This document shows, one piece after another, positions 600-20,547 of a stretch of 64,000 nt of DNA (its first letter is position 1; every line of letters begins with the position of its first letter). Source of the DNA: Guillardia theta CCMP2712. Lineage: Eukaryota; Protista; Cryptophyta. Below the pieces are notes generated by a model. It saw only the letters and a program-made list of their open reading frames with translations. It did not search any database and was not told the DNA's origin. The position numbers were made by a program, and so were the translations under genes. The DNA is taken from contig NW_005434607.1 of NCBI RefSeq assembly GCF_000315625.1, positions 1 to 64,000 of the forward strand, in the 5' to 3' direction.

Positions 600-3500
600 T
601 CACTCGGCATCGCGTCGCTCGAGCACGGACCTGAGCCGTCGGCGCGCCTCAGAAGCACGGGTGTCGGGGATGTTGGGAGGCAGGGCGGCGCCTCGGAGCC
701 GTCGGATGCGTCGGATGTTGTACGAGTTGTCGCTAGCAAGGCTGCTCAGAGCCTCCATCGCGCTATCCTCCAACCACCCGCTGCCCTCATGCCTTTGCAT
801 CGCCCTCGCTACGGCCTCGATCGCTCCCGCCTCCCGCGCCCGCGCCTGGCTGTCTGCCATGCCCGCCGTCATGCTGCGCAAGGCCGTGCATCCGTCACAC
901 TGTAGCCATCGTTCGTCCACATGTGTGGACATGGCGCTGACAACGGCCTCGATCGCTCCCGCCTCCCGAGCCCGCGCCTGGCTGTCAGCCATGCCCGCCG
1001 TCATGCTCTCAAGCGCTTGGCATGCTGACCAATGCAAGCACATCTCGTCTGCGTGCGTGGACATGGCGCTGACGACGGCCTCGATCGCTCCCGCCTCCCG
1101 CGCCCGCGCCTGGCTGTCAGCCATGCCCTCTGTCATGCTGCACAAGGCCTTGCATCCATCATTTTGTAGCCATTGCTTGTCTGCGTGCGTGGACATGGCG
1201 TTGACGACGGCCTCGATTGCTCCCGCCTGCATGGCCGGGAGCTTGTTCTGCTCGTGGCTCTCGGCTATCGCTGTCAGCACCTCGCATAGTCCTTGCTGTA
1301 TCTTCGCGTTGCTCTGGTGCCTGGTCATGGCGCTGACGACAGCCTCGATCGCTTTTGCATCTCTCGCTGTGCCCTGGTATCGGAAGTACTGCATTGTGTA
1401 CTTCAGAGCCCAGCACGCAGCCTGCTGTACTTGCCAGTCGTCCGCATACCTATCGAGGCATCTCATGACGGCCTCGATCGCTCCCGCCTCCCGTGCTCGC
1501 GCCTGGTTGTCTTCGATGCGACCGGACGGTATGTCTCAGGGNNNNNNNNNNNNNNNNNNNNNNNNNNNNNNNNNNNNNNNNNNNNNNNNNNNNNNNNNNN
1601 NNNNNNNNNNNNNNNNNNNNNNNNNNNNNNNNNNNNNNNNNTCGTGGCTCTCGGCTATCGCTGTCAGCACCTCGCATAGTCCTTGCTGTATCTTCGCGTT
1701 GCTCTGGTGCCTGGTCATGGCGCTGACGACAGCCTCGATCGCTTGCGCATCTCTCGCTGTGCCCTGGTATCGGAAGTACTGCATTGTGTACTTCAGAGCC
1801 CAGCACGCAGCCTGCTGTACTTGCCAGTCGTCCGCATACCTATCGAGGCATCTCATGACGGCCTCGATCGCTCCCGCCTCCCGTGCTCGCGCCTGGTTGT
1901 CTTCGATGCGACCGACGGTATGTCTCAGGGCCCAGCACGCAGCCTGCTGTACCCCCGCGTCGACTGCGTGTGTGGACATGGCGCTGACGACGGCCTCGAT
2001 CGCTCCCGCCTCTCGCGCCTGCGCCTGGCTCTCGTCCCTGAAGCTGACAGTGAAGCGCAAGGCCGAGCACGCAGCCTGCTGTACCCCTGCGTCGAATGCG
2101 TGCGTGGTCATGGCGCTGACGACGGCCTCGATCGCTCCCGCCTCTCGCGCCTTGACCTTGTCAGCCTCCCCGTTCCGAGCCATGCTGACCAAGGCTTCGC
2201 ACGCAGCCTGCTGTACCTCCGCGAGAGCCTCGTACGTCCTCATCTCCTGCATCACTGCCTCTATGCTGTCGTCAGCTCCCGTCCTCAGCAGCCTCCATGC
2301 CTCCCTTGCCGGCTGCTCCATCCCGACCGGCAGCGCCTGAGCTCCCGTCCTCAGCGAGCTGAGAGCGTCGCTGCCCGTGGACTCCAAGGCGATGCAAGCT
2401 GACTCTTGCAGCTCCACGAGCTCTGCGTACTTGCGCTTCCTGACTCTCCTCGCCACCGCCTCGATCCCTCCCCCCGCTGCCTCTCCGATCCTTCTCCATG
2501 CAGCTTCTGCCATGCTGCGTATGCCTCGGCATAGCGACTGGTTGCCGGCCCCTGCCCGCTGCTGTCCAGGCGTCCTGTCTGACCATGTCCATGCAGCAGC
2601 CCCCTCATCCCCCTCCGCTCCGGCTCTTCCTACAGCTACCGCAAGCTCGGCGAACCTCGGGCGGTCCTCCTCCCTCGTCGCCCAGCAGCTCTCCAGCAGG
2701 GCCCACAACCCGTCCGGGCATCCTCCGAGGAGGTGCTCTCGAGGCAGCCTCCCACCCCCGCACACGTACCCGATCACAGTCGGGTCCGTCATGGGGTAGT
2801 AGGGGGTCATGCCCGAGGTCAGGATCTCCCAGCACGTGACCCCGTAGGCCCACACGTCGCTCTTCTCCGAGCACCGGCCTCTCTGCATCGACTCTGGGGG
2901 CATGTAGCGCACCGGCAGCGCTCGCCCCGCTACCCTCCCGTCACTCCCGTCCACCAGCTCCCCTGCCCGCCCGTACCCCGCCACCTTCACCGACGTCCTC
3001 CCCACGTCCTCCTTGTCGAAGCCCATGACCAGCACGTGCCGAGCCGCGAGGTCCCGGTGCACGACCCGCTGCTCAGCCAGGTGCTCCATGCCCTGCGCGA
3101 TCTGCTCCATCATCGCCATCTGGTGCCCTCGTGTCACCTGCCCCGCCAGCCTCCCCAGCAGAGCCTCCCTCAGCGACCCCAGCTCGGCGAGCTCGGTCAG
3201 CAGCAGGGGACAGCCGTCGGCGTCGTGGCTCTGCCCCATGTAGCGTACAAGCCGAGGATGCGGCCCGAGTCTGAGCATGACCGCGGCTTGTCTGCCGCCG
3301 TCGTCTTGCCTGAGCTTGAGCACGGCTACCTTGATCTTGCCGGGCCCTGCTCTCCTTCCTTGCTGGCGGAGGTGACCTATGTAGAGGGTCTGGGAGGAGC
3401 CTGCTGAGATAGGCTGCCGCTCCATCTCCACGTCGTGCCTGGGGACGAGCAGCGCGTGTCGCTCCTGCCACTCCTGGATGGCGCTGCGGAGAGCGAGGTT

Positions 3501-3683
3501 GGGGACAAGGTGGTCGGAGGGGAGGAGGGCGCCTGTGAGGGGGCTGGAGAGACGATGGCGGAGCCAGGTCTCGATGGAGGATCTCTGGTAGGTGTGGCCA
3601 TCGCAGCAGGTGACAGGGTCGGTCATGAGCGCCATGCTGATGGGGCAGATGAAGGACGGGAGCGCTCCCTGGTCCGCTGCCAT
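600..3683 (-). CDS. U-box E3 ligase - tyrosine-kinase-like (pseudo)kinase - armadillo repeat protein
   Basis: ATG at 3683 (MAADQG). U-box motif FICPISMALMTDPVTCCDGHTYQRSSIETWL...SPLTG...LVPNLALRSAIQEW; TKL motifs [29 protein letters not shown]...RP; ARM repeats VQQAACxAL...AREAGAIEAVVSAMSTH with 132-bp spacing. Spans the gap at 1542-1641; 3' end approximate. Confidence 0.88.
780..2270 (-). repeat. Coding tandem array of 132-bp (44-aa) ARM repeats
   Basis: acggcctcgat(c/t)gctcccgcct recurs at 811, 943, 1075, 1207 and further copies up to ~2120. Confidence 0.85.
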
Positions 3684-4115
3684 GGCGGGCCGAGGAGCGA
3701 GGGGAGAGGAAGGGAGGGGATAAAGGGGGTACGTGCATCGAGGGAGAGAGGGGGTGCGAGGCCGGTCTAGGGAGGGGTAGGGGGTGGTACGAGGAGGGGA
3801 GAAGAGGGAGGTGGGGTGGTCCAAAAAAGAAAAGCTAATCCTACCAGCGGCTACGGGGGGAGTGTAAAACTAAAAAAAAGAAGAATAAGTCTTGTTGCTG
3901 CCTTTTGTGTACGATGGTATCTTGCGGGTATGTCTTGTTGCTGCCTTTTGTGCATTTGGTGCTGATGGTCTGAGGCGGGTGGCTTTCTACTAGGGAGAGG
4001 ACCAAGGGGATCAAGGGGGGAACCAACGACATTGGCGACAAGAAGAAAGACTGGACATACAGAGCTGCAGGATCTAAGGATAGATTGCAATCATTTCAAG
4101 ATATCTGATCAAGAA

Positions 4116-4601
4116 ATGACAACGTGGATGTCTTATGCGCAAAAAACGAAACTGAATCCTTTGATTGTGAAGTTCAACAAGATCAATCTTGAGAACTCTT
4201 GCTTGAGTGATGTCAAGGACATCATCTTTGATAGGTACATGGAGTTGTGCAAGACAGAGATCAAGGAATTCAACCTTGACAACTTTATGTGCCAGATTTG
4301 CTGCTCTTGGACACCTTGTAAAGAGCGGAATATATCGGATGTGTGCAAGACCTGCAGAGATAATTATTTTGTATGGAGATGCTCTATGTGTGATGATGAT
4401 GTGTTTGAGCACCTCGACGCAATAGTAACCGCAGAATATCTGTGCGATGGATGCTATATGGAGGTGCCATACTGCAAGAGATGTTACGAAGAGGAGCTCG
4501 AGTTCTCATGCTGGAAATGTGGAGACATATACAAGCTGTGTAATGGATATGATGAGGACTGTTGCTCATATGGTTGCACGTCTGGAGACGAATGGTGGTA
4601 G
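4116..4601 (+). CDS. Uninterrupted, AT-rich, cysteine-rich (multi-CxxC) hypothetical protein
   Basis: ORF 4032..4601, first ATG at 4116; CQICC, CKTC, CSMC, CDGC, CKRC, CWKC. Visibly lower GC than the flanking genes. Confidence 0.5.
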   Translation: MTTWMSYAQKTKLNPLIVKFNKINLENSCLSDVKDIIFDRYMELCKTEIKEFNLDNFMCQICCSWTPCKERNISDVCKTCRDNYFVWRCSMCDDDVFEHLDAIVTAEYLCDGCYMEVPYCKRCYEEELEFSCWKCGDIYKLCNGYDEDCCSYGCTSGDEWW

Positions 4602-6336
4602 ACAACAAGGATCCAGGGGGTTACATTTTACAAACTGTGCACCTTCAATCCAAGCATATTTTTTCATCAATGTTTGGATGTTCATTCTTACAAATCTCCA
4701 ATACACTCTTCACAATCTAGCCTTCTTCTCTTGTGGCTACATTGTTCATCTTCACAATCTAGCCTTCTCCGTTATCTACTCTCCTCTCCGCCAGCCTTTT
4801 CCTCTGACCTGATCTTCTCTTCTCTTTGATCTGCTCTCCTTTCACCTGCTTCCCCTCTCCTCTCCTCTCGTGCAAGATCTTCTTCTCTCCGGTCAGATCT
4901 GCTCCTCGCAGTCTCTTCCTTTCCTTCTTTCCGTCTCTTTCCTTCTTCCCCCTTCTCCTCGCTCCTCCATCTCTCTTCACTCGTCCCCTCCCTTGTCCGC
5001 TCCCCTTGTCATTTCACTCCACTACCTCCCCCCTGTCCATTCCTCTTCTCCGCTCTCTGCTCTCTGCTTCTCCCTGCCCTGCTCGTCTCTTCTCCTCCTC
5101 TCTCCTCTCCTCTTCCATCTGTTCCCTTTGCTTTTCTGATCGCCTTTCTACTCTACTGGCTGAGGCTTGAAGAGAAGCAGCTCGACAGGTAAAACCAACG
5201 AGAGAGAAACGAGAGAAGAGAGAAAACGACAAGGGAAGGGAGAGAGAGAGGGTAAGAAAGGGGAAGATGAACAAGCCAGTAGACAACGAGAGATGTTTAC
5301 AAGATGTTTAGGAGAGGGTGAGAAAGAGGGGAAGAGAAAAAAAAGCAGAATCACGACCAGCAGCCAAGATGAGAAAGAGAGAGAGAGAGAGAGAGAGAGA
5401 CAGTGAGAGACAGAGAGACAGAGAGACAGAGAGATAGAGAGAGGATAAGACGTGAGGTATGTATGAGGAGACAGACTCGAGTCGATAAAGAAAAGAGGCA
5501 AGCGAGACAGGCGAGAGAAACTCACGAGGAAGAGGAACATCGAATGACAATGCGAGATGAATAGAGGCAAGACAAATCATCAAGAGATGATGTGCAACAC
5601 ATCACTACATATACAGATAGACGAGAAGCTGTACTGCAACAAACATCAAGAAAGTCATATCTAGAGAGAGACTATGAGAAGAAGAAGAAAATAGGAGGAG
5701 GAAGAAAAGGATCAAGAAAATTAAGGAGAGGACGAAAAGAAAGAAGCAAAACCAAGAACTAACAACGACATCGGCGAAGGTCTGAGACGAGACAACAAGG
5801 AATGAGCAAGGGAAGCAGAGAGGTCTGAGATTGAGTGAGTCAACCTTGCAGTCACTCTTGTCTTGTCTCTTCTTCTCCTTCTCTCCCCTCTCTTCTCCTC
5901 TTCACTCCTCCCCGTCCCTTCCCCTCCGTATCTTTCTACCCCCCTACCCCCTCACCCCCTCACCCTTGCGACATCAGCGTAAAAATCTACACAGACTACC
6001 GGGTCCTACCCCATCACTTTCACGACCACCTACCCATCTCGTCCCTCTCCTTCATGTACCCTCTAGCCCCCTCCCATCAAGAGAGGTCAATCTTTTCTTT
6101 ATTCGAGCCCGAGTGCCCTCAGTGACCGGGCCTGGCCCCGAGGCCCCGGGGCCGCGGCCCGGTGCTTCAGCTACTCCCGTCCCGGGCCCGAGGAGGGACT
6201 CCGGTGAGTAGAGGAAGAGAGCTGCGGGGCTGTACAAGACATGTGCTATCCGAGTCATACGGCAGTAGATGGCTCACTAGTGCAAGCACAAGCGATGAGA
6301 GGCCTAGACCAGTCTCCTCGCATGTCTCCCTAGTCA

Positions 6337-9101
6337 CTAGTAGATCCTGCACATGCTCGTCCCGCTCGAGCGACACATCGGGCATGACCTAGACGTTTCT
6401 GCCTCCTTGCAGTCCCNNNNNNNNNNNNNNNNNNNNNNNNNNNNNNNNNNNNNNNNNNNNNNNNNNNNNNNNNNNNNNNNNNNNNNNNNNNNNNNNNNNN
6501 NNNNNNNNNNNNNNNNTGCAGACGACGCATGGCTGCCCGCGCTCTCCGACGGCATCATCGTATCGCTGCTGAAGCTCTTCCGCAGCTCGCTGAAGCTCGG
6601 CCGCTCCTTGATCTTCTCCCGCCAGCACTCTCGCATGATCGCATACACTGCTGGAGGGCATGCAGCAGGAGCCGCTAGTCGCTCCCCGTCCACAACCTTG
6701 GGTCCTACAAGCTCATCGTCGGTGATGGCCCAGTAAGGGACTTTGCCGTAAGTCCAGACCTCCCACAGCGTCACCCCGAACGCCCACACGTCGCTCTTCT
6801 CCGAGTAGCGATGTCTCAGCAAGCTCTCCGGCGCCATCCATCGCGCCCGTCCAGCCCTCGAGCCTGCCGAGCTCTCGCTCCCTACCCGACTCACTCCGTC
6901 ACCGCGCCAGCCCATGATCCATCGCCCGTAGTCGGCTACCTTGACCCTCACCCCGAGGTGATCCTGCCCTTGCAGACTCCAGACAAGCACGCTCCTCGCC
7001 GCCAGCTCCCGGTGTACAACCTCGTGCAGCGACAGCTGCTCCATCCCGTCGCAGATCTGCCTGGCCACCTCCAGCTGCACCAGCTCACCTATCGTCTCCT
7101 CCTCCTCCGCGAAGCTGCGCAAGGTCCTCTCGAGAGAGCCCTGGCAAGCGTACTCAGTCACCAGGCAGTAGTCGCCAGAGCTTGGCTCGACGGTGACGGC
7201 GAGGAGGCCAAGCAAGCTGCGGTGACGGCCCAGCTGGTGCCAGGTCTTGAGCTCCTGCTCGAGAGCTTGTCTCCTGGCAGTAGCTCCGCTGCCTCGGATA
7301 CGTAGGATGGCCACGTCAGCGGTGCTGGCGTGCGGCTGCAGCCAGCGAGCCTTGTAGACGAGCTTGGAGGAGCCTGAGCCGACCTGACGACTGTCGACCA
7401 GGCTGTCGTAGTCCACCGATGGCACGCTTCCCAGCTGGAGACGAGAGGATCACGTCAGTCATCGACCCTCGTACAGACACAAACAGGACCTGAGAGACAG
7501 CGCCCTGCTGGTTGTCGTCGTCAGACGCCTGCTGCTCCGCGTCTCTCCGCTGGCGCTTGCGCTGGCGCTTCTTGCTCTTGTCGCTTCTACACCTCTCATG
7601 TCGCTCGATCCCCTCCTGCGCGGGCTTGACGCTGCCTTGCAGTGCCGCTGACAGAAGCTCCCCGCTCCATCCCCCGCCGCATCCAGCCCTCTATCTTGCT
7701 CGCCAGCTCCTCGTCCTGCCTCTCTCGCGCTGCCTCCGCCGCTGTTCGTCCCAGCGAGTCTCGCAGCTCCCCGAGCTCTCCGCCCCCGACCTCCAGCAGC
7801 CTCTCACAGACAGACCAGATGCCTCGCGCCGCCGCCACGTGCAGCGCCGAGCCATCGGACTCCACCACACACTTGATAGACACGCTGGTCACCCAATCAA
7901 AGTCACCTTGAAGACAAGCCTTCTGCGTCATGCTCCAAGGTCCCACACCCTCAAGGTATGATCCCTACTCCCGCTAACAGCCGTCTTGCCGTCCCCGCTG
8001 ATCGCCACGCTCCATACCGTATCGCTATGACCTCTAAGACAAGCCTTCTGCTTCATGCTCACAAGGTCCCACACCCTCAAGGTCCCATCCTTCCCCCCGC
8101 TGACAGCCGTCTTGCCGTCCTTGCTGATCGCCACGCGAAATACCATTTGACTGTGACCTCTAAGACNNNNNNNNNNNNNNNNNNNNNNNNNNNNNNNNNN
8201 NNNNNNNNNNNNNNNNNNNNNNNNNNNNNNNNNNNNNNNNNNNNNNNNNNNNNNNNNNNNNNNNNNGCGTCATGCTCTCAAGTTCCATACTGCAAGAAGT
8301 CCATGCAACTGCTGACAGCCGTCTTGCGTCCCGCTGATCGCCACGCTCCATGCCAGCGATATTACCTTTCCAGGCAAGCTTTGCGTCATGCTCCCAAGGT
8401 CCCACACACTCAACGTTTTATCCATGCCCCCCACTGACAGCCGTCTTGCCGTCCTTGCTGATCGCCACGCTGTTGATCCGACCACCATCACTCTCAAGAC
8501 AAGCCTTCTGCGTCATGCTCTCAAGGTCCCACACCCTCAACGCCTTATCCATGCCCCCGCTGACAGCCGTCTTGCCGTCCCCGCTCATCGCTACGCTCCA
8601 TATCGCTTTACTATGACCCTCAAGACAAGCCTTCTGCGTCATGCTCCCAAGGTCCCACACCCTCAACGTGTTATCCTCACTCCCGCTAATAGCCGTCTTG
8701 CCGTCGCTGCTCATCGCCACGCTCTTTACCCAGTCACTATGACCCTCGAGACAAGCCTTCTGCTTCATGCTCCCAAGGTCCCACACCCTCAAGGACTCAT
8801 CCCAGCTCCCGCTGACTATGGCCGTGACCCTCGCTGGTCCTACTGGATGCCTCTGCTTCAGTCGCTCTGCTCCTGCACTCACAACCAGCGCTCTCACTTG
8901 CCCCTCATCTCCTCTCTCGATCGCTTCGATCAGCTGCTGCCGCTTCCTCTCATCCTCCTCCATCCTCTCCCGCTCGTCGTCGGAGACCAGGCTCATCCTC
9001 CTCCTCGCTCGTCCTGCAGCCCCAGCAAAAGGACCTCTTGTCTTCCCTCGCTCCTCGCGAGCAGACTGTCTGCCGTCCAATACCCCGTGCAGCGTGTTCA
9101 T
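6337..9101 (-). CDS. Ankyrin/WD40 - tyrosine-kinase-like pseudokinase - RING finger protein
   Basis: Ankyrin-like [17 protein letters not shown] and [11 protein letters not shown]...[12 protein letters not shown] flank WD40 repeats ([31 protein letters not shown]). Kinase exon ~7437-6560 ([31 protein letters not shown]). RING halves GQPCVVC and C..CPMCR...RIY* lie on either side of gap 6417-6515. Start uncertain (gap at 9111); frameshifts near contig ends. Confidence 0.8.
7870..8825 (-). repeat. Highly similar 126-bp WD40 tandem repeats (about 7 or more units, gap inside)
   Basis: (a/g)agacaagccttctgc register at 7911, 8036, 8162 (cut by gap), 8496, 8622, 8748. Confidence 0.88.
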
Positions 9102-9779
9102 CGGCGGCCANNNNNNNNNNNNNNNNNNNNNNNNNNNNNNNNNNNNNNNNNNNNNNNNNNNNNNNNNNNNNNNNNNNNNNNNNNNNNNNNNNNNNNNNNN
9201 NNNNNNNNNNNNNNNNNNNNNNNNNNNNNNNNNNNNNNNNNNNNNNNNNNNNNNNNNNNNNNNNNNNNNNNNNNNNNNNNNNNNNNNNNNNNNNNTCCTC
9301 TTCCTCTGCTTATCCTACCGAGCTCTGTCAGGACCCCTCCTTTATCCCTCCCTCCCACCCCTACCCCACTCCCTTACCCCCCAGTCCCCCACCCCCCCTC
9401 TCCCGGATCTAGGGGGTGGTACGAGGAGGGGAGAGAAGGTACGGGGGGTGGTGCAACTAATCCTAACTACCGTACCGAGGAGGAGGGAGGGGTGGAGGAG
9501 CAAGGGGCGGGAGGGAGGGAAGGGGCGGGAGGGGTGGTGGGGTGGGGTCGAGAGTTCAACCCTCTTTCTCGGTCACGTTGTCCTCCCGGCTGCACTACAA
9601 GGGCCCGGGCCCGTGGAATGTCCCGGCCCGGGCCCCGGGCCCGGTCTCTCAGTGACGTTGCCACGGTCTAGGGTCTTGAGCCTCCGAGGCTCCGGTGACT
9701 GAGACGTGAAGAAGGTGATGCTGTGCCGCAAGACTGAGACGCGAACTTGGTGGGTGACATGGGGCAGACAGCCAGGCGT

Positions 9780-10129
9780 CAGCCGGGAGACGGGCAGGTG
9801 GAGGAGAAGCAGGAGAAGCTGAGAGATGGTACAGCTGGACCTGAGAGGTGAAGGAGGCGAGAGAGGACCTGGAGGACATCAGTCACCTCCGGCTCTCCTC
9901 CAGCTCGCGCTCCTCTCAGGTCGATGAAGGAGGAGGAGAAGAGGCTAGCTGATATGTCGTGCAGCAGTAAGATACAGGAGGTCATCATCGTCATCATCGT
10001 CATCATCATCATCATCGTCATCATCATCANNNNNNNNNNNNNNNNNNNNNNNNNNNNNNNNNNNNNNNNNNNNNNNNNNNNNNNNNNNNNNNNNNNNNNN
10101 NNNNNNNNNNNNNNNNNNNNNNNNNNNNN

Positions 10130-10160
<31 letters not shown>

Positions 10161-10182
10161 GTCATCATCATCATCGTCATCG

Positions 10183-10250
<68 letters not shown>

Positions 10251-11527
10251 GTCATCATCGCGTCTACCGGCCGCTGACAGCATCTGGTCACAGAGTTCGA
10301 CAGACAGGCCACGGAAGCTTTGCATGAGGCATCTCTTAACGCTCAAACTCTCATTCCCCTTCTCAGTTATCGCCCGGCACCTGACGACTCCGTATCAGAG
10401 GCATGTCACCGTATCCTGCCTCCTCCCTCACCAGTCCTCGAACCCTGTGGCAAGGGAAGGAGCAGCTCCGTAGTTCATCAGCTCCTGCTCAGTCTCATCA
10501 CATGCAGCACAGCGAGCGCAAGCACTACCTCCTCCGTCGGATCCATGTATTTCTTTCCCACCTTGCTCCACACGTTTCCTTTCTTGTCTGTTCCCGGCGC
10601 TGTAGACACAACCCTCCCTCCCTGGTCAACCAGCACGACTCTTGTCTCCCCGCGGAACATCAGCTGAAGGTATACAGACGACACCACCCGCTCCTCCTGC
10701 ACAGCCGCACCCTCTTCACTCTCACCCTGCTCCTCCTTGTCCTGCATGACACCCTGTGCCTCTCCTCCCGCCGCGTCCTCGGGACTCTCCTGCTCACTTC
10801 CCTCCGACATGCTCTCGGAGTTTTCATCGTACAACCCTTCCACAGAGAAGACCTCGTCGTCACTGACTCCTGCTGCCTCCTCCTCTGCATTCTCTGCTTG
10901 TGTGCTCAGGGTCCGTTCGGTGAAGTCTAACCTGACCAGCCGGGCGAAAGGAACGAGCTCGACACGAGTGAGGTAAAGATCCCTGAGGCTCTCCTGCATC
11001 AACGTCGAGAAGGCGGAGGATTGCACATGACGAGGCTCCTCGCTCGAGACTGCTATCCTTCCATACTTCGGGTGCCAGTTCAACAGCAGGTAGACACTCT
11101 CTCCAACCCCCTCGGCCCTGCCCTCCTCTGCGCTCCCCTCTCTGAGGAAGCGCAAGGCGACCTGAGTTTGACTTGTTTGGAATGCTTTGTCAAACTTGAT
11201 CGGCAAGCACTCTCGCACATCCTCGCACAGTGCAAACAAGGTCGTGTAGTCGATGGGCTGGGAAGCAACCCGTTCCTTGGAAACCCCTTGGGACGTCGCT
11301 TGCATACTCAAACTCGATGCACCCGCCATGTACTGATCGGAGGAGAAGGAAGCATGAACTCTTCGTTGCATGCTCTTCGCAGTACCTACAGAACCAATAC
11401 GAGACCTGCAGGCATGCATGGAGTGTAGGGCCGCTTTGGAGAGGAACGGCAGCTTGCTCGGTGCGAGAAAGCCGGTGGAGGAGGGAATCGAAATGCAGAG
11501 AAACATGAGAAGACTAGCACACAGCAT
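9780..11527 (-). CDS. NFACT-N / FbpA (RqcH-like) N-terminal domain protein, probably plastid-targeted
   Basis: ATG 11527: signal-peptide-like MLCASLLMFLCISIPSSTG then FLAP and a Ser/Arg-rich transit-like region; QPIDYTTLFAL, LLLNWHPKYGRI, RLVRLDF, VYLQLM...VVLVD; later exon RCLMQSFRGLSVELCDQML (H2TH-like). 3' end uncertain. Confidence 0.65.
9983..10260. repeat. (CAT)n microsatellite containing an assembly gap
   Basis: Direct reading; probably intronic. Confidence 0.95.
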
Positions 11528-12922
11528 GGATGACCGACTTCTGCTTTTTCCTCTTTCGCCCTCTCCCTCTCGCTCCCTCCCTCTTTCTCTCTCCCTCTTT
11601 CTCTCTCCCTCTTCCTCTCTTCCTCTTCCCCTTCCTCTTCCTCTTCCCCTTCCTCTTCCTCTTCCTCTTCCTCTTCCTCCTCCTCTTCCCTCTACAGATG
11701 CGATCGCTCTTTGCAAGTCCGCAGGACAATGTCCTGCCAAATTTCTTTAAAACGGATTCGCAGAATCCCAACCGCCTCAGAGGAGATAGGGAACTCATCG
11801 CCCTCATTCACTCACCTCGAAGTCACCGTCGCACAGATCGGACTCTACACGACCACCAACCCCCCCCCAGGAAAGTCTCGCTCACTCAGTACCCCCTACC
11901 CTCCCTGATACTACCCCACCTTCTTCCCGAGTTGAGCACTACCATGGATATCAACCAGCCGAGGCTCCCTTGAAGCCTGGCTAGTACCCCCCTCTTCTCC
12001 CTACTTGTCGTCTATTGCACTGGGATACCTGGTCAGCCTCGGATATTTCACTAGGGACCCTAGCAAAAGTACCCCCCACATCCCCTCAGAGTACCCCTGT
12101 CTCCCTCACTGCAAGCCAGCGGTCCGAGTCGGGGTTCCCGGACTGCGGAGCTGATTATTTTAAAAAATTGAGAGAAGGGGAGGGGGTAGGGTCATTTGAG
12201 TACCTGGTACTTTTCGGACGATGTTGATTATTAAAGGGTGGGTGGGGTACTCGAATGATCAGGTGTATCAGGGAATGACCGGGCCCAAGAAACTTCGGGT
12301 CAGGACGGGGGTGGTGGAACTTCCGAAACATACGGAGAAGAGTAGGGTGGGTGACGTGGAGTGGGGGTGAATTTACCTGCGTCTGAAGGGAGAGAGAGTG
12401 GGTGGGTACTTGATTCCAGGGCTACGGCTACCGGTAGGGGGGGTGGTAAAGTGGGCGGAAATGGTACTGGTAGTAACCTGAGCTTGCATTTTTGTCATCA
12501 GTAGTGTCGGGTGGAAAAACAGACATAGGGTGGGTGGTACATGAATCTCCGAAAGGTAGGGATGTTTTCATTATCAGAATCCCAGTCACAAGTGGGGTGG
12601 GTAGAAAAGGACCAGGGTAGTCCTGCAATGGCAGGGGTGGAGTGGTCAGAGGGGTTGCCTGCGACGCGAGACAAACATGCGGAGAAAGAGCGGAGGAGGA
12701 GGAGGAGGAGAAGTAGAGGCGGGGTAGGGAGGACGCCAGGAAGCGGACAAGAGAGAGGCAGAGCACAAGGAGCAAGAACCAGACCGCGCTAAGAACAATA
12801 GGAAGGCACTGGAGAACAGTCGCTGAGCTGTCATGCAGGCAGCAAAGAACAGTAAGGAGGAGAGTGTTTCCTCTACGAAGATCGAAGCAGCAGACTCGTG
12901 AACGTTTTGGCAAGTTAGGAAA

Positions 12923-17900: not shown

Positions 17901-20547
17901 TTGTGGCCTTTCGCATCTTGTGCATGTATCGATAAGCGCAGCTGGTCTGCGGCAGCAACAAGACGTCAGTCCTTGGAAGCTTTTCTGTCTGCGATGCACC
18001 TTGGCATGCTCAACAAGGGTTCGAATGGCAGCGACTTTCAAACGGAACTGGTTCAACGCTGACCACCTGGCAAGGGATATGAGGACCATGAACATGGTGA
18101 GCTCTTGAAGCAAAGGGTGTGAGACTGACATCCTGAAAGTCTTCTGGATCATCACGCAGCTCGTTCCCCACTTCTGATACTTGCTCCTCGTCAAGTATGC
18201 TTTCACGTGCGCCTGGGTCAAGAAGTCACCTGACCCTCTTGACTCATCATGACACCGAGCATCACCTTGAGCAGCAGACGGCAGTGCAGCTTGAACACTT
18301 TGTACTTCTCCTCGATGATAGACGAGGCGTGATCGCGCAGGAACACCTTCGACGTTCCGATCCGCCACATCTCAGGATCCTTGAGGAAGAACTGCCAAGA
18401 TGCGGTCGTCACCCTCAAGGACTCTTGGAATCTCCAGCAGGTACCTCAAGGATCTTGGTGTGATCGTAGGATGAGTTGCGACACCGGGCCGAGCTCACGT
18501 AGACCTCCCCGTAGCGGCTCACAAAATCTGCAAACGTGTAGGAGACCGGCCAGCCAGCTCTCCTAGCCCTCACAGTCTCGGTGACCCCTACAAGTCCGTC
18601 ATGAAGGGCCTTGAGCTGAGCAGCCACGCAAGGAGGCAGACAATAGACTCACCAGAGCATCTCAGCTGACGGATGACGTTGGGTGCCTCGAAGCAATGGG
18701 ACTGACGCACAGCATTAGGCTGGACTGAGTGAGTTGGTCTCGGCTACCTTTCTATCGTTGTTGGGTTTGACGCATCGAACGTAGTGAGCTTTTCCACTTT
18801 CGATCAGGCTCACGAGTTCCTGAAGCTGTTGCTTGAACTGGAATCCAAGAGAGCGCTTGTCCTGTTGCCGCTGCTTGGCAGAGGCCGCGCTCCTCGCTCC
18901 GGTTGTTCTTGTTGTTCCTCCTCCGACCCGTCGACCTCCGATCATTCTTCCTGCCGAAGCAGAGTCCTACAAAGAAGTGAGAATCACTGAGAACCGATGT
19001 CAACAAGTTATCACCTTGTCCGTATCATCCGCGTTGGACTCTTGCATGATGGTGCGGATCAGAGCGTGCTGGGAGCTTTTCAAAACAGTCTTGAGGCTTT
19101 CATTGATGGTATCGCGGTTCTTCTCCAGGAAAAGTGTCACGGTGTACTCCACCTCTCCAGCAAAGTGGCTGATCACGAATGCTTCTTTTGAGCTCTGGAC
19201 TCGTGCAGATCCATACTTGGAATGAGCGTTCGAGGTCTGCAAGCCTTCCTTCAAGTGAGGATCCGAGGAGGATCCTCCAGGTTTCAGATGTGTATGGCTC
19301 TTGTGGAGATCCATCAGCTTAGATAGAAATCCTTCTTCGGATCCCTTAGGCACATTGCATTCATCATCAATCAGCGCAAAGATTCCCATCTTGGACTCGA
19401 GCAAGTCAACACACGGGGAGTTGTCTTCGAAGGGGATAGCATCGACCTTCACGCCCTCCTTCTCGTATTGGGCCATCATCGAGTGCAACATTTGATTGAT
19501 GAACTGCTGCTGCAGGGTCTCATTCGCATAATTGATACAGAGCTGTTCGAAAGAATTGTATTCGAACACTTCGAAACCAAAGATGTCCAGCACCCCGATG
19601 AAGTGACTCTCAACTTTGCGCTTCTCGTTCTCGCTCAAATGAGAGAAGACGTCCGAGGAGCTCAGGCAAGTATTCACACACCCAACAAGCCAAGCGAACA
19701 GCTTCTCGTAGATCACCTTGCAAAGTGCATCGCGGGATGCTGCGGCAGATTCTGCTTTCTGAGGAACCTGGATCGGATTGGTTTCCCCGGTCACTTTGAC
19801 CATGCTGTGTGTAAGACAATTCTCAAGTACAGAGGCATCACATGATAGTAAATCTGCAGTGAAGGATAGAATGTCTCCATTGGATACCTTGGAGCCGTCC
19901 GCTGAGGTTTTGTTCTCTACACTCTCAAACTGGATATTCCCAAGGTGAAGGATAGCAGCCAAGACTTCCCAAATTTGCCGTTGCGTCACTTCTTCGATCT
20001 GCATCTGCGTCATGGATTGCTGCACTCGATCGAACTCCACAACTTCATCGCAGAGGGGTTTACCATCCGTATCGAGCAGCTGATAAACCCCACTCTGATT
20101 GAGATAGTGAAAGTTCTCTGGACCAGCAAGGTGGAGTTTATCCCTCAGTTCACCAGTCAATCCCGCACAGATTTGATAGAACACGTGATAATTCCTCTCC
20201 CCCTTGTGCTGTGACACAACCCGAGCCTTCTCGAGAAGGTAATGTCGTACGCGACCACCACATATCGTGTGGTCAGGGCTGAAGAGAATTTGAATGAATT
20301 TTCCAAAACGAGAGGAGTTTTCGTTGCGGACTGTCTTTGCGTTCCCAAACGCTTCGAGAAGAGGGTTGCTCTCGATGATTTGGTTCTGAACTTGACGAGT
20401 CTGGAAGAAGGGGTTTAGTTTGTTCCCTCCTCCCTTGAACGACGATTCCTTCGATGTGGTGGCGGCCTGAACCACGAGCTTGGCCACTTCGGTCTTTCCA
20501 GCCCCGCTCTCACCGGAGCACAGGATCGACTGGCAGACATTCTTACT
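14914..20547 (-). CDS. Myosin heavy chain with IQ motifs, helical/coiled-coil tail and PH domain
   Basis: P-loop QSILCSGESGAGKTE (~20535-20488), LEAFGNAKTVRNENSSRFGKF, YLLEKARVV, switch II LDIFGFE, NSFEQLCINYANE, HYVRCVKPN, IRQLRCSG, IGTSKVFLR; IQ-like IQKTFR; PH domain VLKEGWLLKQSKKLKKWQKR/YFVLDNVALYY (~16190-15940). 5' end unresolved. Confidence 0.92.

What the first reader, a model, noticed from the sequence alone, without database searches (positions are those of the whole stretch)
600..9101. Paired modular repeat-array + pseudokinase + E3-ligase genes: candidate algal surveillance/immune receptor family
Seen: two neighbouring co-oriented genes carry related TKL domains (shared AGSSQ/SGSSK glycine loop, HR[DE]LAAR, unusual insert before VKVA[GD][10 protein letters not shown]) but different accessory modules in different order: U-box/kinase/ARM array versus ankyrin+WD40 array/kinase/RING. 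Known: U-box and RING are interchangeable E3 folds, and swappable, internally homogeneous repeat arrays typify innate-immune sensors such as fungal NLRs. Inference: a mix-and-match family where a repeat array binds a ligand, a catalytically weak kinase acts as switch or scaffold, and ubiquitination is the output.
Basis: partly seen in the sequence, partly recalled or inferred. Interest (0 to 1): 0.82.

Follow-up and report, generated by a model that had tools for sequence, protein, structure and literature searches.

The report
Paired kinase–ubiquitin-ligase fusion genes, multi-copy
Two adjacent, expressed genes of the cryptophyte alga Guillardia theta each fuse a repeat array and a catalytically degenerate kinase to a ubiquitin-ligase domain. 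They belong to a large, undescribed cryptophyte gene family whose WD40 repeats vary mainly at predicted binding-surface positions, which suggests changing recognition specificities but does not show an immune role.

Summary
On the minus strand lie gene 1 (600-3683: U-box, kinase, ARM array) and gene 2 (6337-9101: coiled coil, WD40 propeller, weak ankyrin-like stretch, kinase, C-terminal RING; one spliced intron).

All three gaps were tested:
- Gap 1 is an unmerged ~290-nt contig overlap. Collapsing it gives an 897-aa ORF.
- Gap 2 really holds 54 nt and is in frame once a 1-nt reference error at 6575 is corrected.
- Gap 3 lies in the WD40 array and cannot be sized.

The genome is Guillardia theta. 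The two kinases belong to sister clades (at least 28 and 26 loci) of one TK-like family, seen by name only in cryptophytes. U-box–kinase–ARM is almost fixed. Kinase–RING is fixed, but its N-terminal module changes by subclade (WD40, LRR plus membrane span, coiled coil, beta-helix). So modules were swapped a few times, not freely.

Only the recently amplified subclades holding the window genes have lost catalytic residues. The pair recurs as a ~9.5-kb unit on at least five other contig places. WD40 units are 83% identical in DNA, and three predicted top-face positions give dN/dS near 7. RNA-like contigs cover both genes.

The ligase-with-sensor mechanism is inferred. The immune role is untested.

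The parts
600..3683 (-). Gene 1 coding region: U-box, pseudokinase, linker, ARM array. 897 aa once the duplicated gap flanks are collapsed; stop codon at 600-602.
   Evidence: ORF list; Pfam; collapsed ORF 858/860 identical to C337; RNA-like contigs over 3200-3661.
3456..3656 (-). U-box domain of gene 1 (aa 10-76).
   Evidence: PF04564, E 2e-17, 63.5 bits against a cut-off of 21.4.
2640..3410 (-). Kinase-fold domain of gene 1, a predicted pseudokinase. G-loop SAGSSQ, alpha-C Glu replaced by Gln, HRDLAARH (Asn replaced by His), GYG in place of DFG.
   Evidence: PF07714, E 6.5e-49; motif table; alignment to EGFR.
700..2276 (-). ARM repeat array of gene 1: 132-nt units, about 9 after the collapse. 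It contains gap 1 and its artefactual duplicate.
   Evidence: Pfam Arm and ARM_LRRK2; direct repeats with 132-nt spacing; unit list.
1252..1914 (.). Gap 1 (1542-1641) with its two 99% identical flanks (1252-1524 and 1642-1914): an unmerged contig overlap.
   Evidence: The left flank carries one extra g near 1525, which creates a stop.
4032..4601 (+). Cys-rich 189-aa ORF between the two genes. It is part of the repeated unit. Its status as a gene is uncertain.
   Evidence: ORF; copies at 85-99% identity; no Pfam hit; no usable Atlas hit; no RNA-like contigs.
6337..7434 (-). Gene 2 exon 2: pseudokinase and C-terminal RING, with the stop codon at 6337-6339. It contains gap 2 (real length 54 nt) and a 1-nt reference deletion at 6575.
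6574..7392 (-). Kinase-fold domain of gene 2, a predicted pseudokinase. GSGSSK, VAIL at the beta-3 Lys position, [11 protein letters not shown].
   Evidence: PF07714, E 4.5e-57; alignment to EGFR; motif table.
6340..6516 (-). RING finger (C3HC4_3 type). Only the last three Cys and the C-terminal tail are in the window (6340-6416); the rest lies in gap 2.
   Evidence: Paralog L033: PF13920, E 4.8e-13, all eight ligands present. Gap bridged by RNA-like contigs.
7435..7489 (-). 55-nt GT..AG intron of gene 2.
   Evidence: Splice joint 7434->7490 with ends CT..AC on the plus strand, in run X6. Paralogs have the same exon ends.
7490..9101 (-). Gene 2 exon 1: N-terminal helical region, WD40 array, ankyrin-like stretch and basic linker. 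The frame breaks at 7671 and about 7933 are contradicted by read-based contigs. The start codon is at 9101 or 8996.
   Evidence: Paralogs have an uninterrupted 483-484-aa exon.
7870..8810 (-). WD40 array with a 126-nt period and about 8 units counting one hidden in gap 3 (8167-8266). The stretch 8267-8420 is poorly supported.
   Evidence: The paralog array folds as a high-confidence propeller (pLDDT above 90).
7682..7853 (-). Ankyrin-like helical stretch, not confirmed.
   Evidence: Ank_2 E 0.034-0.043, below the cut-off; pLDDT under 50.

Best explanation
These are two real, transcribed nuclear genes of Guillardia theta. They belong to sister clades of one TK-like kinase family, found by name only in cryptophytes, whose members are fused to ubiquitin-system domains.

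Gene 1 is a cytosolic U-box E3 ligase with a dead kinase domain and a C-terminal ARM array. Gene 2 has a seven- or eight-bladed WD40 propeller, a weakly degenerate kinase domain and an IAP-like RING at the extreme C-terminus.

Proposed mechanism (inferred, not shown): the repeat array binds a protein target, the U-box or RING recruits a charged E2 and ubiquitinates that target or a partner, and the pseudokinase acts as a scaffold or conformational switch rather than as an enzyme.

The pair, with a small Cys-rich ORF between the genes, forms a unit of about 9.5 kb that has been copied repeatedly. The copies keep their E3 and kinase parts nearly identical under purifying selection, while the arrays differ in unit number, unit order and surface residues. 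The family therefore appears to be diversifying what it recognises.
For: Domains.

Organism: (GUITHDRAFT proteins).

Family size and recurrence of the pair. There are about 28 clade-A and 26 clade-B places. The same order and strand recur on C122 (twice), C239, C300 and C409.

Architecture table.

Tree. The combined clade is 99/91 and the WD40 subclade 95/86.

Loss of catalytic residues only in the amplified subclades: checked against EGFR.

Purifying selection on the non-repeat parts: U-box plus kinase dS 0.037 with dN/dS 0.37; gene-2 kinase dS 0.027 with dN/dS 0.56.

Arrays are the variable part. Between copies the kinase is 98-99% identical while ARM is 62-72% and WD40 69-78%. ARM unit order and number differ, and open frames range from 959 to 1196 aa.

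WD40 units are 83% identical in DNA. The three predicted top-face positions give dN/dS 7.1, against 0.57 for the rest.

Transcription and splicing. Two runs give zero cover over the intergenic 3794-5971, cover both genes, and one shows the GT..AG joint.

Relatives in other cryptophytes (Hanusia phi, Baffinella) and an environmental WD40–kinase–RING protein.
Against: - No biochemical evidence exists for ligase activity, target binding or lack of kinase activity.
- The whole family has an unusual N-lobe, so a pseudokinase call from motifs could be wrong for gene 2, which keeps the G-loop Lys, the alpha-C Glu and the DYG Asp.
- All laid data are contigs, so expression cannot be assigned to this copy rather than to a paralog at least 97% alike. 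The window's own letters at 7063, 7087, 7090, 7215 and 7251 are supported by no contig.
- The ARM arrays show no dN/dS above 1.
- The dN/dS estimates are pairwise counts on 19 repeat units that exchange sequence. They are not a site model on a tree.
- Some near-identical 'copies' (C337, C461, C612) may be allelic or overlapping contigs.
Confidence: 0.6

Rival explanations
1. One reading: the family is an innate-immune or non-self surveillance system. The arrays would sense pathogen or foreign molecules, ubiquitination would be the output, and the two linked genes might act as a sensor/helper pair.
For: - Copy-number expansion in clusters.
- Highly similar repeats with diversifying selection at three predicted binding positions. 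This is the pattern described for the fungal het-d/het-e WD40 receptors (PMC1805685).
- Relatives with a signal peptide, an LRR ectodomain and a membrane span before the kinase–RING core (L045 and L048).
- Physical linkage of the two genes kept in at least 6 copies.
Against: - No NACHT, NB-ARC, TIR or death-fold domain was found in any piece scanned.
- No expression data under challenge exist here.
- Gene-1-type copies (at least 15) outnumber gene-2-type copies (at least 9), so the pairing is not strict.
- Rapidly diversifying repeat proteins also occur in mating, self-incompatibility and surface-recognition systems.
- No paper on this family was found.
Confidence: 0.25
2. The genes are ordinary housekeeping or signalling E3 ligases. 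The many copies reflect neutral segmental duplication plus assembly redundancy, and the array differences reflect unequal crossing-over without selection for new specificities.
For: - The unit sits at a contig end next to single-copy housekeeping genes (NFACT, myosin).
- Several copies lie on very small contigs or are 98-99.9% identical.
- The ARM arrays show no dN/dS above 1.
- The reference carries indel errors in this region.
Against: - At the three positions chosen beforehand from WD40 structure, dN is 1.36 while dS (0.19) equals that of the rest of the repeat. Neutral shuffling does not predict this.
- Copies on large contigs (C122, C207, C239, C300, C62) differ by 2-7% in DNA and carry different arrays, so they are not assembly duplicates.
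Confidence: 0.2
3. Gene 2, and perhaps the whole unit, is a decaying pseudogene copy, or an assembly chimera with no function of its own.
For: - As assembled, gene 2 has frame breaks near 8425, 8300, 7933, 7671 and 6575, plus two internal gaps.
- The stretch 8267-8420 has almost no read support.
- The two flanks of gap 1 differ at a few bases, and the left flank matches C337, so the scaffold may join two copies.
Against: - Read-based contigs remove the breaks at 6575 (all four runs, otherwise perfect matches), at 7671, and at about 7933 in part.
- Paralogs have intact exons.
- dN/dS below 1 in the non-repeat parts.
- Spliced RNA contigs.
Confidence: 0.07
4. The repeated ~9.5-kb unit is cargo of a mobile element or of an integrated virus.
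For: - The multi-copy unit is dispersed, and its intergenic DNA and a Cys-rich ORF of unknown function are conserved between copies.
- GC-rich palindromic motifs lie on both sides of gene 2.
Against: - No transposase, integrase, reverse transcriptase or capsid domain was seen in the pieces scanned.
- Gene 2 has a spliced intron.
- Both kinase clades have many divergent host paralogs and relatives in other cryptophytes.
Confidence: 0.05

Closest known systems
Plant PUB-ARM E3 ligases (U-box followed by ARM repeats, e.g. ARC1, PUB12/13) and their receptor-kinase partners (from my own knowledge)
   Same: A U-box with a C-terminal ARM array. In plants the ARM domain docks onto kinase domains, so kinase plus U-box-ARM is a known working combination.
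   Different: Here a kinase-fold domain is built into the same polypeptide, between the U-box and the ARM array, and it has lost its catalytic residues. Plant U-box kinases (e.g. PUB33/70, weak hits) have the kinase before the U-box, and their kinase belongs to a different branch (an outgroup).
Arabidopsis KEG (RING, kinase, ankyrin and HERC2-like repeats; from my own knowledge)
   Same: One protein that combines a RING E3 domain, a kinase domain and repeat arrays.
   Different: The domain order is reversed (RING first in KEG, last here), the repeats are of other types, and no sequence relationship was tested.
Fungal HNWD/het-e NLRs with highly conserved WD40 repeats (PMC1805685, PMC4986451)
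   Same: 42-residue WD40 units that are very similar in DNA. Variation is concentrated at a few positions of the propeller's interaction surface under diversifying selection. The family has several members, and repeat numbers vary.
   Different: There is no NACHT NTPase and no HET or other death domain. The output domains are a pseudokinase and a RING. Exchange of repeats between loci was not shown here: C239 and C122b keep the positional order of their units.
WNK kinases (catalytic Lys moved to strand beta-2; PMC4718504)
   Same: Across the family the canonical beta-3 Lys column holds Leu or Gln, and the third glycine of the G-loop is Lys (GSGSFK). This is the arrangement I recall for WNK1.
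   Different: The family is not related to WNK by sequence. It has HRDLAARN and RWMAPE signatures, and its best solved matches are EGFR, CSK, Eph and Abl. The equivalence is at motif level only and was not tested on a structure. Gene 1 has lost this Lys.
Repeat-plus-pseudokinase scaffolds such as ILK (ankyrin plus pseudokinase) and the multi-repeat kinase LRRK2 (from my own knowledge)
   Same: A repeat array joined to a kinase fold that acts, wholly or partly, as a scaffold. Pfam's ARM_LRRK2 model matches the ARM array.
   Different: Those proteins have no E3 domain, and there is no close sequence relationship.

Membership tests
Eukaryotic protein kinase fold (Pfam PK_Tyr_Ser-Thr) | Significant match to the kinase-domain profile over its full length. 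| tested here: met
   Gene 1: 167 bits. Gene 2: 193.7 bits. Cut-off 23.1.
Catalytically competent protein kinase | Beta-3 Lys, alpha-C Glu, HRD Asp, catalytic-loop Asn and DFG Asp all present. | tested here: not met
   Gene 1: alpha-C Gln, Asn replaced by His, DFG replaced by GYG, Leu in the canonical Lys column. Gene 2: HRE, Asn replaced by Ser, Leu in the Lys column. Deeper relatives keep HRD, Asn and D[YF]G.
Tyrosine-kinase-like signature (TK versus TKL assignment) | HRDLAARN catalytic loop and the P-x-[KR]-W-x-[AP]-P-E activation-segment motif; placement within a named kinase group. | tested here: inconclusive
   Relatives carry both motifs, and the best solved matches are tyrosine kinases. 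However, the family forms its own clade apart from animal TKs (99/91). No group-level classification was run.
U-box E3 ligase | Match to the U-box profile above its curated cut-off. | tested here: met
   PF04564, 63.5 bits against 21.4, profile positions 4-71 of 73.
U-box E3 ligase | E2-dependent ubiquitin transfer. | not testable with these tools
   Needs an in vitro assay.
RING finger, C3HC4_3 (IAP-like C-terminal RING) | Eight zinc ligands with the C-x2-C ... C-x-H ... C-x2-C ... C-x2-C spacing, and a profile match. | tested here: met
   Met in paralog L033, which is 96% identical: PF13920, 49.1 bits against 27, all eight ligands present. In the window only the last three Cys lie outside gap 2. 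RNA-like contigs bridge the gap with 54 nt.
WD40 beta-propeller | Tandem WD40 units that fold as a closed propeller. | tested here: met
   PF00400 E 1.3e-28 in the window and 2.7e-64 in L033. The AlphaFold model has pLDDT above 90 over residues 60-350 with about 29 strands.
Ankyrin repeat | Profile match above the cut-off, or a confident helix-turn-helix repeat fold. | tested here: inconclusive
   Ank_2 15 bits against 27.3 (E 0.03-0.04). The modelled helices have pLDDT under 50.
Armadillo repeat array | Several tandem Arm units. | tested here: met
   PF00514 45 bits against 20.6 and ARM_LRRK2 49 bits against 26.2; 132-nt period.
NLR / STAND immune receptors | A central NACHT or NB-ARC NTPase domain. 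| tested here: not met
   No such Pfam match in any piece of either gene or of the paralogs scanned.
High-internal-conservation repeat receptors (the fungal NLR repeat pattern) | Repeat units highly similar in DNA, with hypervariable positions on the binding surface under positive selection. | tested here: met
   WD40 units have mean DNA identity 0.83. Positions 21, 23 and 39 give dN/dS 7.1 against 0.57 elsewhere. This is a pairwise estimate only. ARM units do not meet the criterion (dN/dS 0.59 at their variable sites).
WNK-type atypical kinase | A catalytic Lys supplied from strand beta-2 in place of the beta-3 Lys, shown on a structure or by mutation. | not tested
   Only the motif was seen: Lys at the third G-loop Gly in gene 2 and most relatives, Gln in gene 1. 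No WNK sequence was at hand to align.

The most novel reading that the evidence does not exclude
Cryptophytes may have evolved their own intracellular recognition system. It would consist of clustered, rapidly duplicating gene pairs whose WD40 (and perhaps ARM) arrays diversify at their binding surface as fungal NLR repeats do. The signal would be ubiquitination through built-in U-box and RING domains instead of an NTPase switch. The kinase lineage behind it would have relocated its catalytic lysine to the G-loop, as WNK kinases did, and then lost activity in the sensor subclades. The two linked genes would act together, for example as sensor and executor.
Probability: 0.2. Interest if true: 0.8.

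Novelty: new variant of a known kind. Interest (0 to 1): 0.6.

Why it matters
Little is known about how secondary-plastid algae such as cryptophytes recognise viruses, bacteria or other cells. No NLR-like system has been characterised in them.

A family of several dozen genes that wires repeat arrays and kinase folds directly to ubiquitin-ligase domains gives concrete candidates for such a system. One subfamily shows the same kind of repeat evolution as fungal non-self receptors.

It is also a natural experiment in how active kinases turn into pseudokinase scaffolds. The public gene models for this family are truncated to 'partial' kinase domains, so these architectures are not visible in current annotation.

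If the family turns out to be ordinary substrate-specific E3 ligases, the value is more modest: a corrected annotation and a lineage-specific domain fusion.

Tried and rejected
The unit's left border and any terminal repeats therefore remain unknown. Only about 3.8 kb around each kinase hit could be read.
- The Cys-rich ORF at 4032-4601 gave nothing in Pfam or the protein atlas and has no RNA-like cover.
- Positive selection in the ARM units was looked for and not found. My first dN/dS for the gene-2 kinase was wrong because of a coordinate offset and was redone.
- An ankyrin domain was tested twice and not confirmed.
- A viral or transposon origin was considered and given low weight (see rivals).
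- Paper searches for the family and a word search of earlier scan notes found nothing relevant.
- The spliced gene-2 product was never joined for a search. Exons were searched apart, by reference (L033:2402-3853 and L033:1315-2379).
- The only joining done was the collapse of the gap-1 duplicate inside a script, to test the reading frame.
- The large representative-protein search was not used.

Full report
**Identity and layout**

The window is the first 64 kb of contig C67 of an 87.1-Mb, 669-contig assembly. Protein hits name it Guillardia theta CCMP2712. Both genes of the finding lie on the minus strand.

Gene 1 starts at the ATG at 3683 and ends at the stop at 600-602. Pfam finds a U-box (aa 10-76), a PK_Tyr_Ser-Thr kinase domain (aa 92-348, E 6.5e-49) and Arm/ARM_LRRK2 repeats through to the end.

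Gene 2 runs from 9101 (or from a second ATG at 8996, which is the start used by paralog L033) to a stop at 6337-6339. It has a helical N-terminus, a WD40 array with a 126-nt period, a short ankyrin-like stretch, a basic linker, a 55-nt intron, a kinase domain (E 4.5e-57) and the tail of a RING.

The two kinase domains are 35% identical (E 4e-38).

**The gaps, tested first**

*Gap 1 (1542-1641).* It is flanked by a 273-nt direct repeat that is 99% identical. Contig C337 is 99.9% identical to window 1642-4931 and runs straight through: window 1104-1541 maps onto the same C337 bases as window 1642-1930. The flanks are therefore an unmerged overlap. Removing one copy gives an uninterrupted 897-aa ORF, identical to C337 at 858 of 860 residues. 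As assembled, the frame is broken, because the left flank has one extra g near 1525 that creates a stop.

*Gap 2 (6417-6516).* Contigs of two RNA-like runs bridge it with 54 letters instead of 100. All eleven paralogs compared on the same strand also have 54. All four runs insert a T after 6575, in contigs that are otherwise perfect. With that base and the 54 letters, the kinase frame runs into the RING frame.

*Gap 3 (8167-8266).* It lies inside the WD40 array. The repeat register on its two sides is 83 nt apart rather than 126, so the true gap is about 143 nt or 143 plus a multiple of 126. The 150 nt to its right (8267-8420) carry several frame changes and have almost no read support. Continuity and frame there are unknown.

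*Other frame breaks.* Read-based contigs also contradict the breaks at 7671 and, in about half of the depth, near 7933. Paralogs on C239, C122 and C409 have an intact 483-484-aa exon 1 and a 355-aa exon 2. I therefore read the gene-2 breaks as errors of the reference, not as decay.

**RING and ankyrin**

In the contiguous paralog L033 (96% identical), exon 2 ends with a complete C3HC4_3 RING (PF13920, E 4.8e-13). All eight ligands are present, and a short hydrophobic C-terminal tail follows.

The ankyrin call is weak. Ank_2 scores 15 bits against a cut-off of 27.3, and the AlphaFold model of exon 1 gives pLDDT under 50 for that stretch. The propeller, by contrast, is modelled above 90.

**Family census**

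Searching the whole genome with each kinase gives about 28 places for gene 1's clade. About 15 of these are 95-100% identical in protein, and the others are 47-80% identical. Gene 2's clade has about 26 places, of which about 9 are 95-97% identical and the others 49-70%. These counts are lower bounds.

The same order and orientation of the two genes recurs on C122 (twice), C239, C300 and C409. The intergenic DNA, including a Cys-rich ORF on the other strand, is repeated with them at 85-99% identity. To the right of about 10350 the window is single-copy and carries ordinary genes (NFACT, myosin head). The repeated unit is therefore about 9.5 kb, and its left side is cut off by the contig end.

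**Architectures**

Every clade-A locus with readable flanks is U-box–kinase–ARM, down to 47% kinase identity. The one exception (C38:549k) has another N-terminus and a ubiquitin-like domain after the kinase.

In clade B the kinase–RING core is kept throughout, but the part before the kinase differs:
- WD40 plus the ankyrin-like stretch in the near-identical copies and in C50.
- A signal peptide, LRRs and a membrane span in C9 and C8.
- A CxxC motif plus a charged coiled coil in several loci.
- A beta-helix in C6.
- An ankyrin array before a truncated kinase in C461.

A maximum-likelihood tree of 61 kinase domains places clades A and B together on a starred branch (99/91), apart from animal tyrosine kinases. 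The WD40 group (95/86) and the LRR group (99/96) are each monophyletic. Modules were therefore exchanged a handful of times, and each arrangement was then duplicated. The family is modular, but not a free mix-and-match.

Relatives with the same cores occur in Hanusia phi, Baffinella and unnamed environmental sequences. These include U-box–kinase–ARM, U-box–kinase–ubiquitin and WD40–kinase–RING proteins. I found no named non-cryptophyte member, and no paper on the family.

**Catalytic residues (register checked against EGFR)**

The whole family lacks Lys in the canonical beta-3 column (VAVLK in clade A; VAIQR or VAILR in clade B). Most members have Lys in place of the third G-loop glycine (GSGSFK). 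This recalls WNK kinases, where a beta-2 Lys replaces the beta-3 Lys (PMC4718504). The equivalence rests on my memory of the WNK1 motif and was not tested.

Most members keep the alpha-C Glu, HRDLAARN and D[YF]G.

The amplified gene-1 subclade has lost four of these in steps: Asn to His and DFG Asp to Gly first, then the G-loop Lys to Gln and the alpha-C Glu to Gln.

The amplified gene-2 subclade has HRE in place of HRD and Ser in place of the catalytic-loop Asn.

Both window genes are therefore predicted pseudokinases, and this is a derived state.

**Selection**

Between the near-identical copies, the U-box plus kinase of gene 1 has dS 0.037 and dN/dS 0.37. The gene-2 kinase has dS 0.027 and dN/dS 0.56. 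These parts are conserved, not decaying.

The arrays are the divergent part. ARM is 62-72% and WD40 69-78% identical between copies whose kinases are 96-99% identical. ARM units differ in order and number, and open frames run from 959 to 1196 aa.

Nineteen distinct WD40 units are on average 83% identical in DNA. Nine positions picked by entropy give dN/dS 2.0, against 0.36 for the rest.

Three positions were chosen beforehand from the known top-face hot spots of WD40 blades: two before and one after the conserved Val of strand A, and the residue before the conserved Asp. These give dN 1.36 with dS 0.19, a ratio of 7.1, against 0.57 elsewhere. This is the pattern reported for the fungal het-d/het-e WD40 receptors (PMC1805685).

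The variable ARM positions (22, 26, 29, 30, 33, 36) follow a helical period, as expected for one face of helix 3, but they show no excess of non-synonymous change.

These are pairwise counts on repeats that may exchange sequence. They are indications, not a formal test.

**Expression**

Four runs were laid on 3200-9110, all as contigs. The DNA run covers everything. Two runs guessed to be RNA give no cover at all over the intergenic 3794-5971. They do cover 3200-3661 (the 5' coding part of gene 1) and 6121-7557 (the gene-2 3' UTR, RING and kinase). One of them carries the joint 7434->7490, with GT..AG ends on the minus strand. These runs therefore behave as RNA, and both gene types are transcribed and spliced.

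Contigs cannot tell this copy from paralogs at least 97% alike. At five positions in the gene-2 kinase, no contig carries the window's own letters.

**Interpretation**

Shown:
- the domain make-up;
- the family structure;
- loss of catalytic residues;
- conservation of the non-repeat parts;
- concentration of variation at predicted WD40 surface positions;
- transcription.

Inferred:
- the arrays bind targets;
- the U-box and RING ubiquitinate;
- the kinase folds act as scaffolds or switches;
- the linked genes cooperate.

The extreme C-terminal position and the tail of the RING resemble dimerising IAP-type RINGs (my own knowledge). That would allow activation by ligand-driven oligomerisation, but this is speculation. 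An immune or non-self role is a reasonable hypothesis and was not tested. No NTPase switch domain is present, so the genes are not NLRs.

**Limits**

- The borders of the repeated unit and the full arrays of most copies could not be read.
- The spliced gene-2 product was never joined for a search. Exons were searched separately, by reference.

Noticed in passing
window 4032-4601 (+): A 189-aa Cys-rich ORF with many CxxC pairs lies between the two genes. It is conserved at 85-99% in the other copies of the unit. It has no Pfam or atlas match and no RNA-like cover in the two runs laid.
   Followed up: partly
L045 (G000:C9:1058983-1062837) and L048 (G000:C8:79702-83589): Relatives of gene 2 with a signal peptide, an LRR ectodomain, a membrane span, an apparently intact kinase and a C-terminal RING. 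This is a receptor-like kinase with a built-in E3 domain.
   Followed up: partly
all loci L001-L056 (motif table): The whole family lacks Lys in the canonical beta-3 column and has Lys in place of the third G-loop glycine. This is a WNK-like arrangement in kinases that otherwise carry tyrosine-kinase signatures (HRDLAARN, RWMAPE).
   Followed up: partly
L023 (G000:C38:547728-551522): A clade-A-related kinase without a U-box, followed by a ubiquitin-like domain (PF00240, E 3.8e-15). Environmental relatives combine a U-box, a kinase and ubiquitin.
   Followed up: partly
L038 (G000:C461:1264-4887): An ankyrin-repeat array (Ank_2, E 6e-25) lies directly upstream of a gene-2-type kinase that lacks its first ~80 residues, followed by the RING. 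It may be a shuffled variant or a misassembly; the contig has gaps.
   Followed up: no
L042 (G000:C234:37276-41127), 3546-3851 (-): A fragment of a PARP catalytic domain (E 6.4e-12) lies upstream of a kinase–RING gene, on the same strand. It is unclear whether it belongs to the same gene.
   Followed up: no
window 6575, 7671-7673, 7933-7934: The reference assembly has single-base indel differences from all or most read-based contigs at these sites. Each one breaks the reading frame of gene 2.
   Followed up: yes
window 6120-6190 and 9590-9650: GC-rich stretches built of GGGCCC/CCCGGG-type palindromes lie just downstream and just upstream of gene 2. Function unknown.
   Followed up: no
window 9960-10280 and 5380-5450: A long ATC/ATG-type trinucleotide run, interrupted by an assembly gap, that reads as poly-Met/Ile/Asp in the ORF lists, and a (GA)n microsatellite.
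   Followed up: no
window 10481-11740 (-) and 19003-20487 (-): Single-copy housekeeping genes (an NFACT N-terminal domain and a myosin head) begin directly to the right of the repeated unit.
   Followed up: yes
P0121, P0125, P0126, P0128 (NCBI GUITHDRAFT models): The public gene models of this family are 'partial' proteins holding only the kinase domain. The repeat arrays and E3 domains are missing from the annotation.
   Followed up: partly
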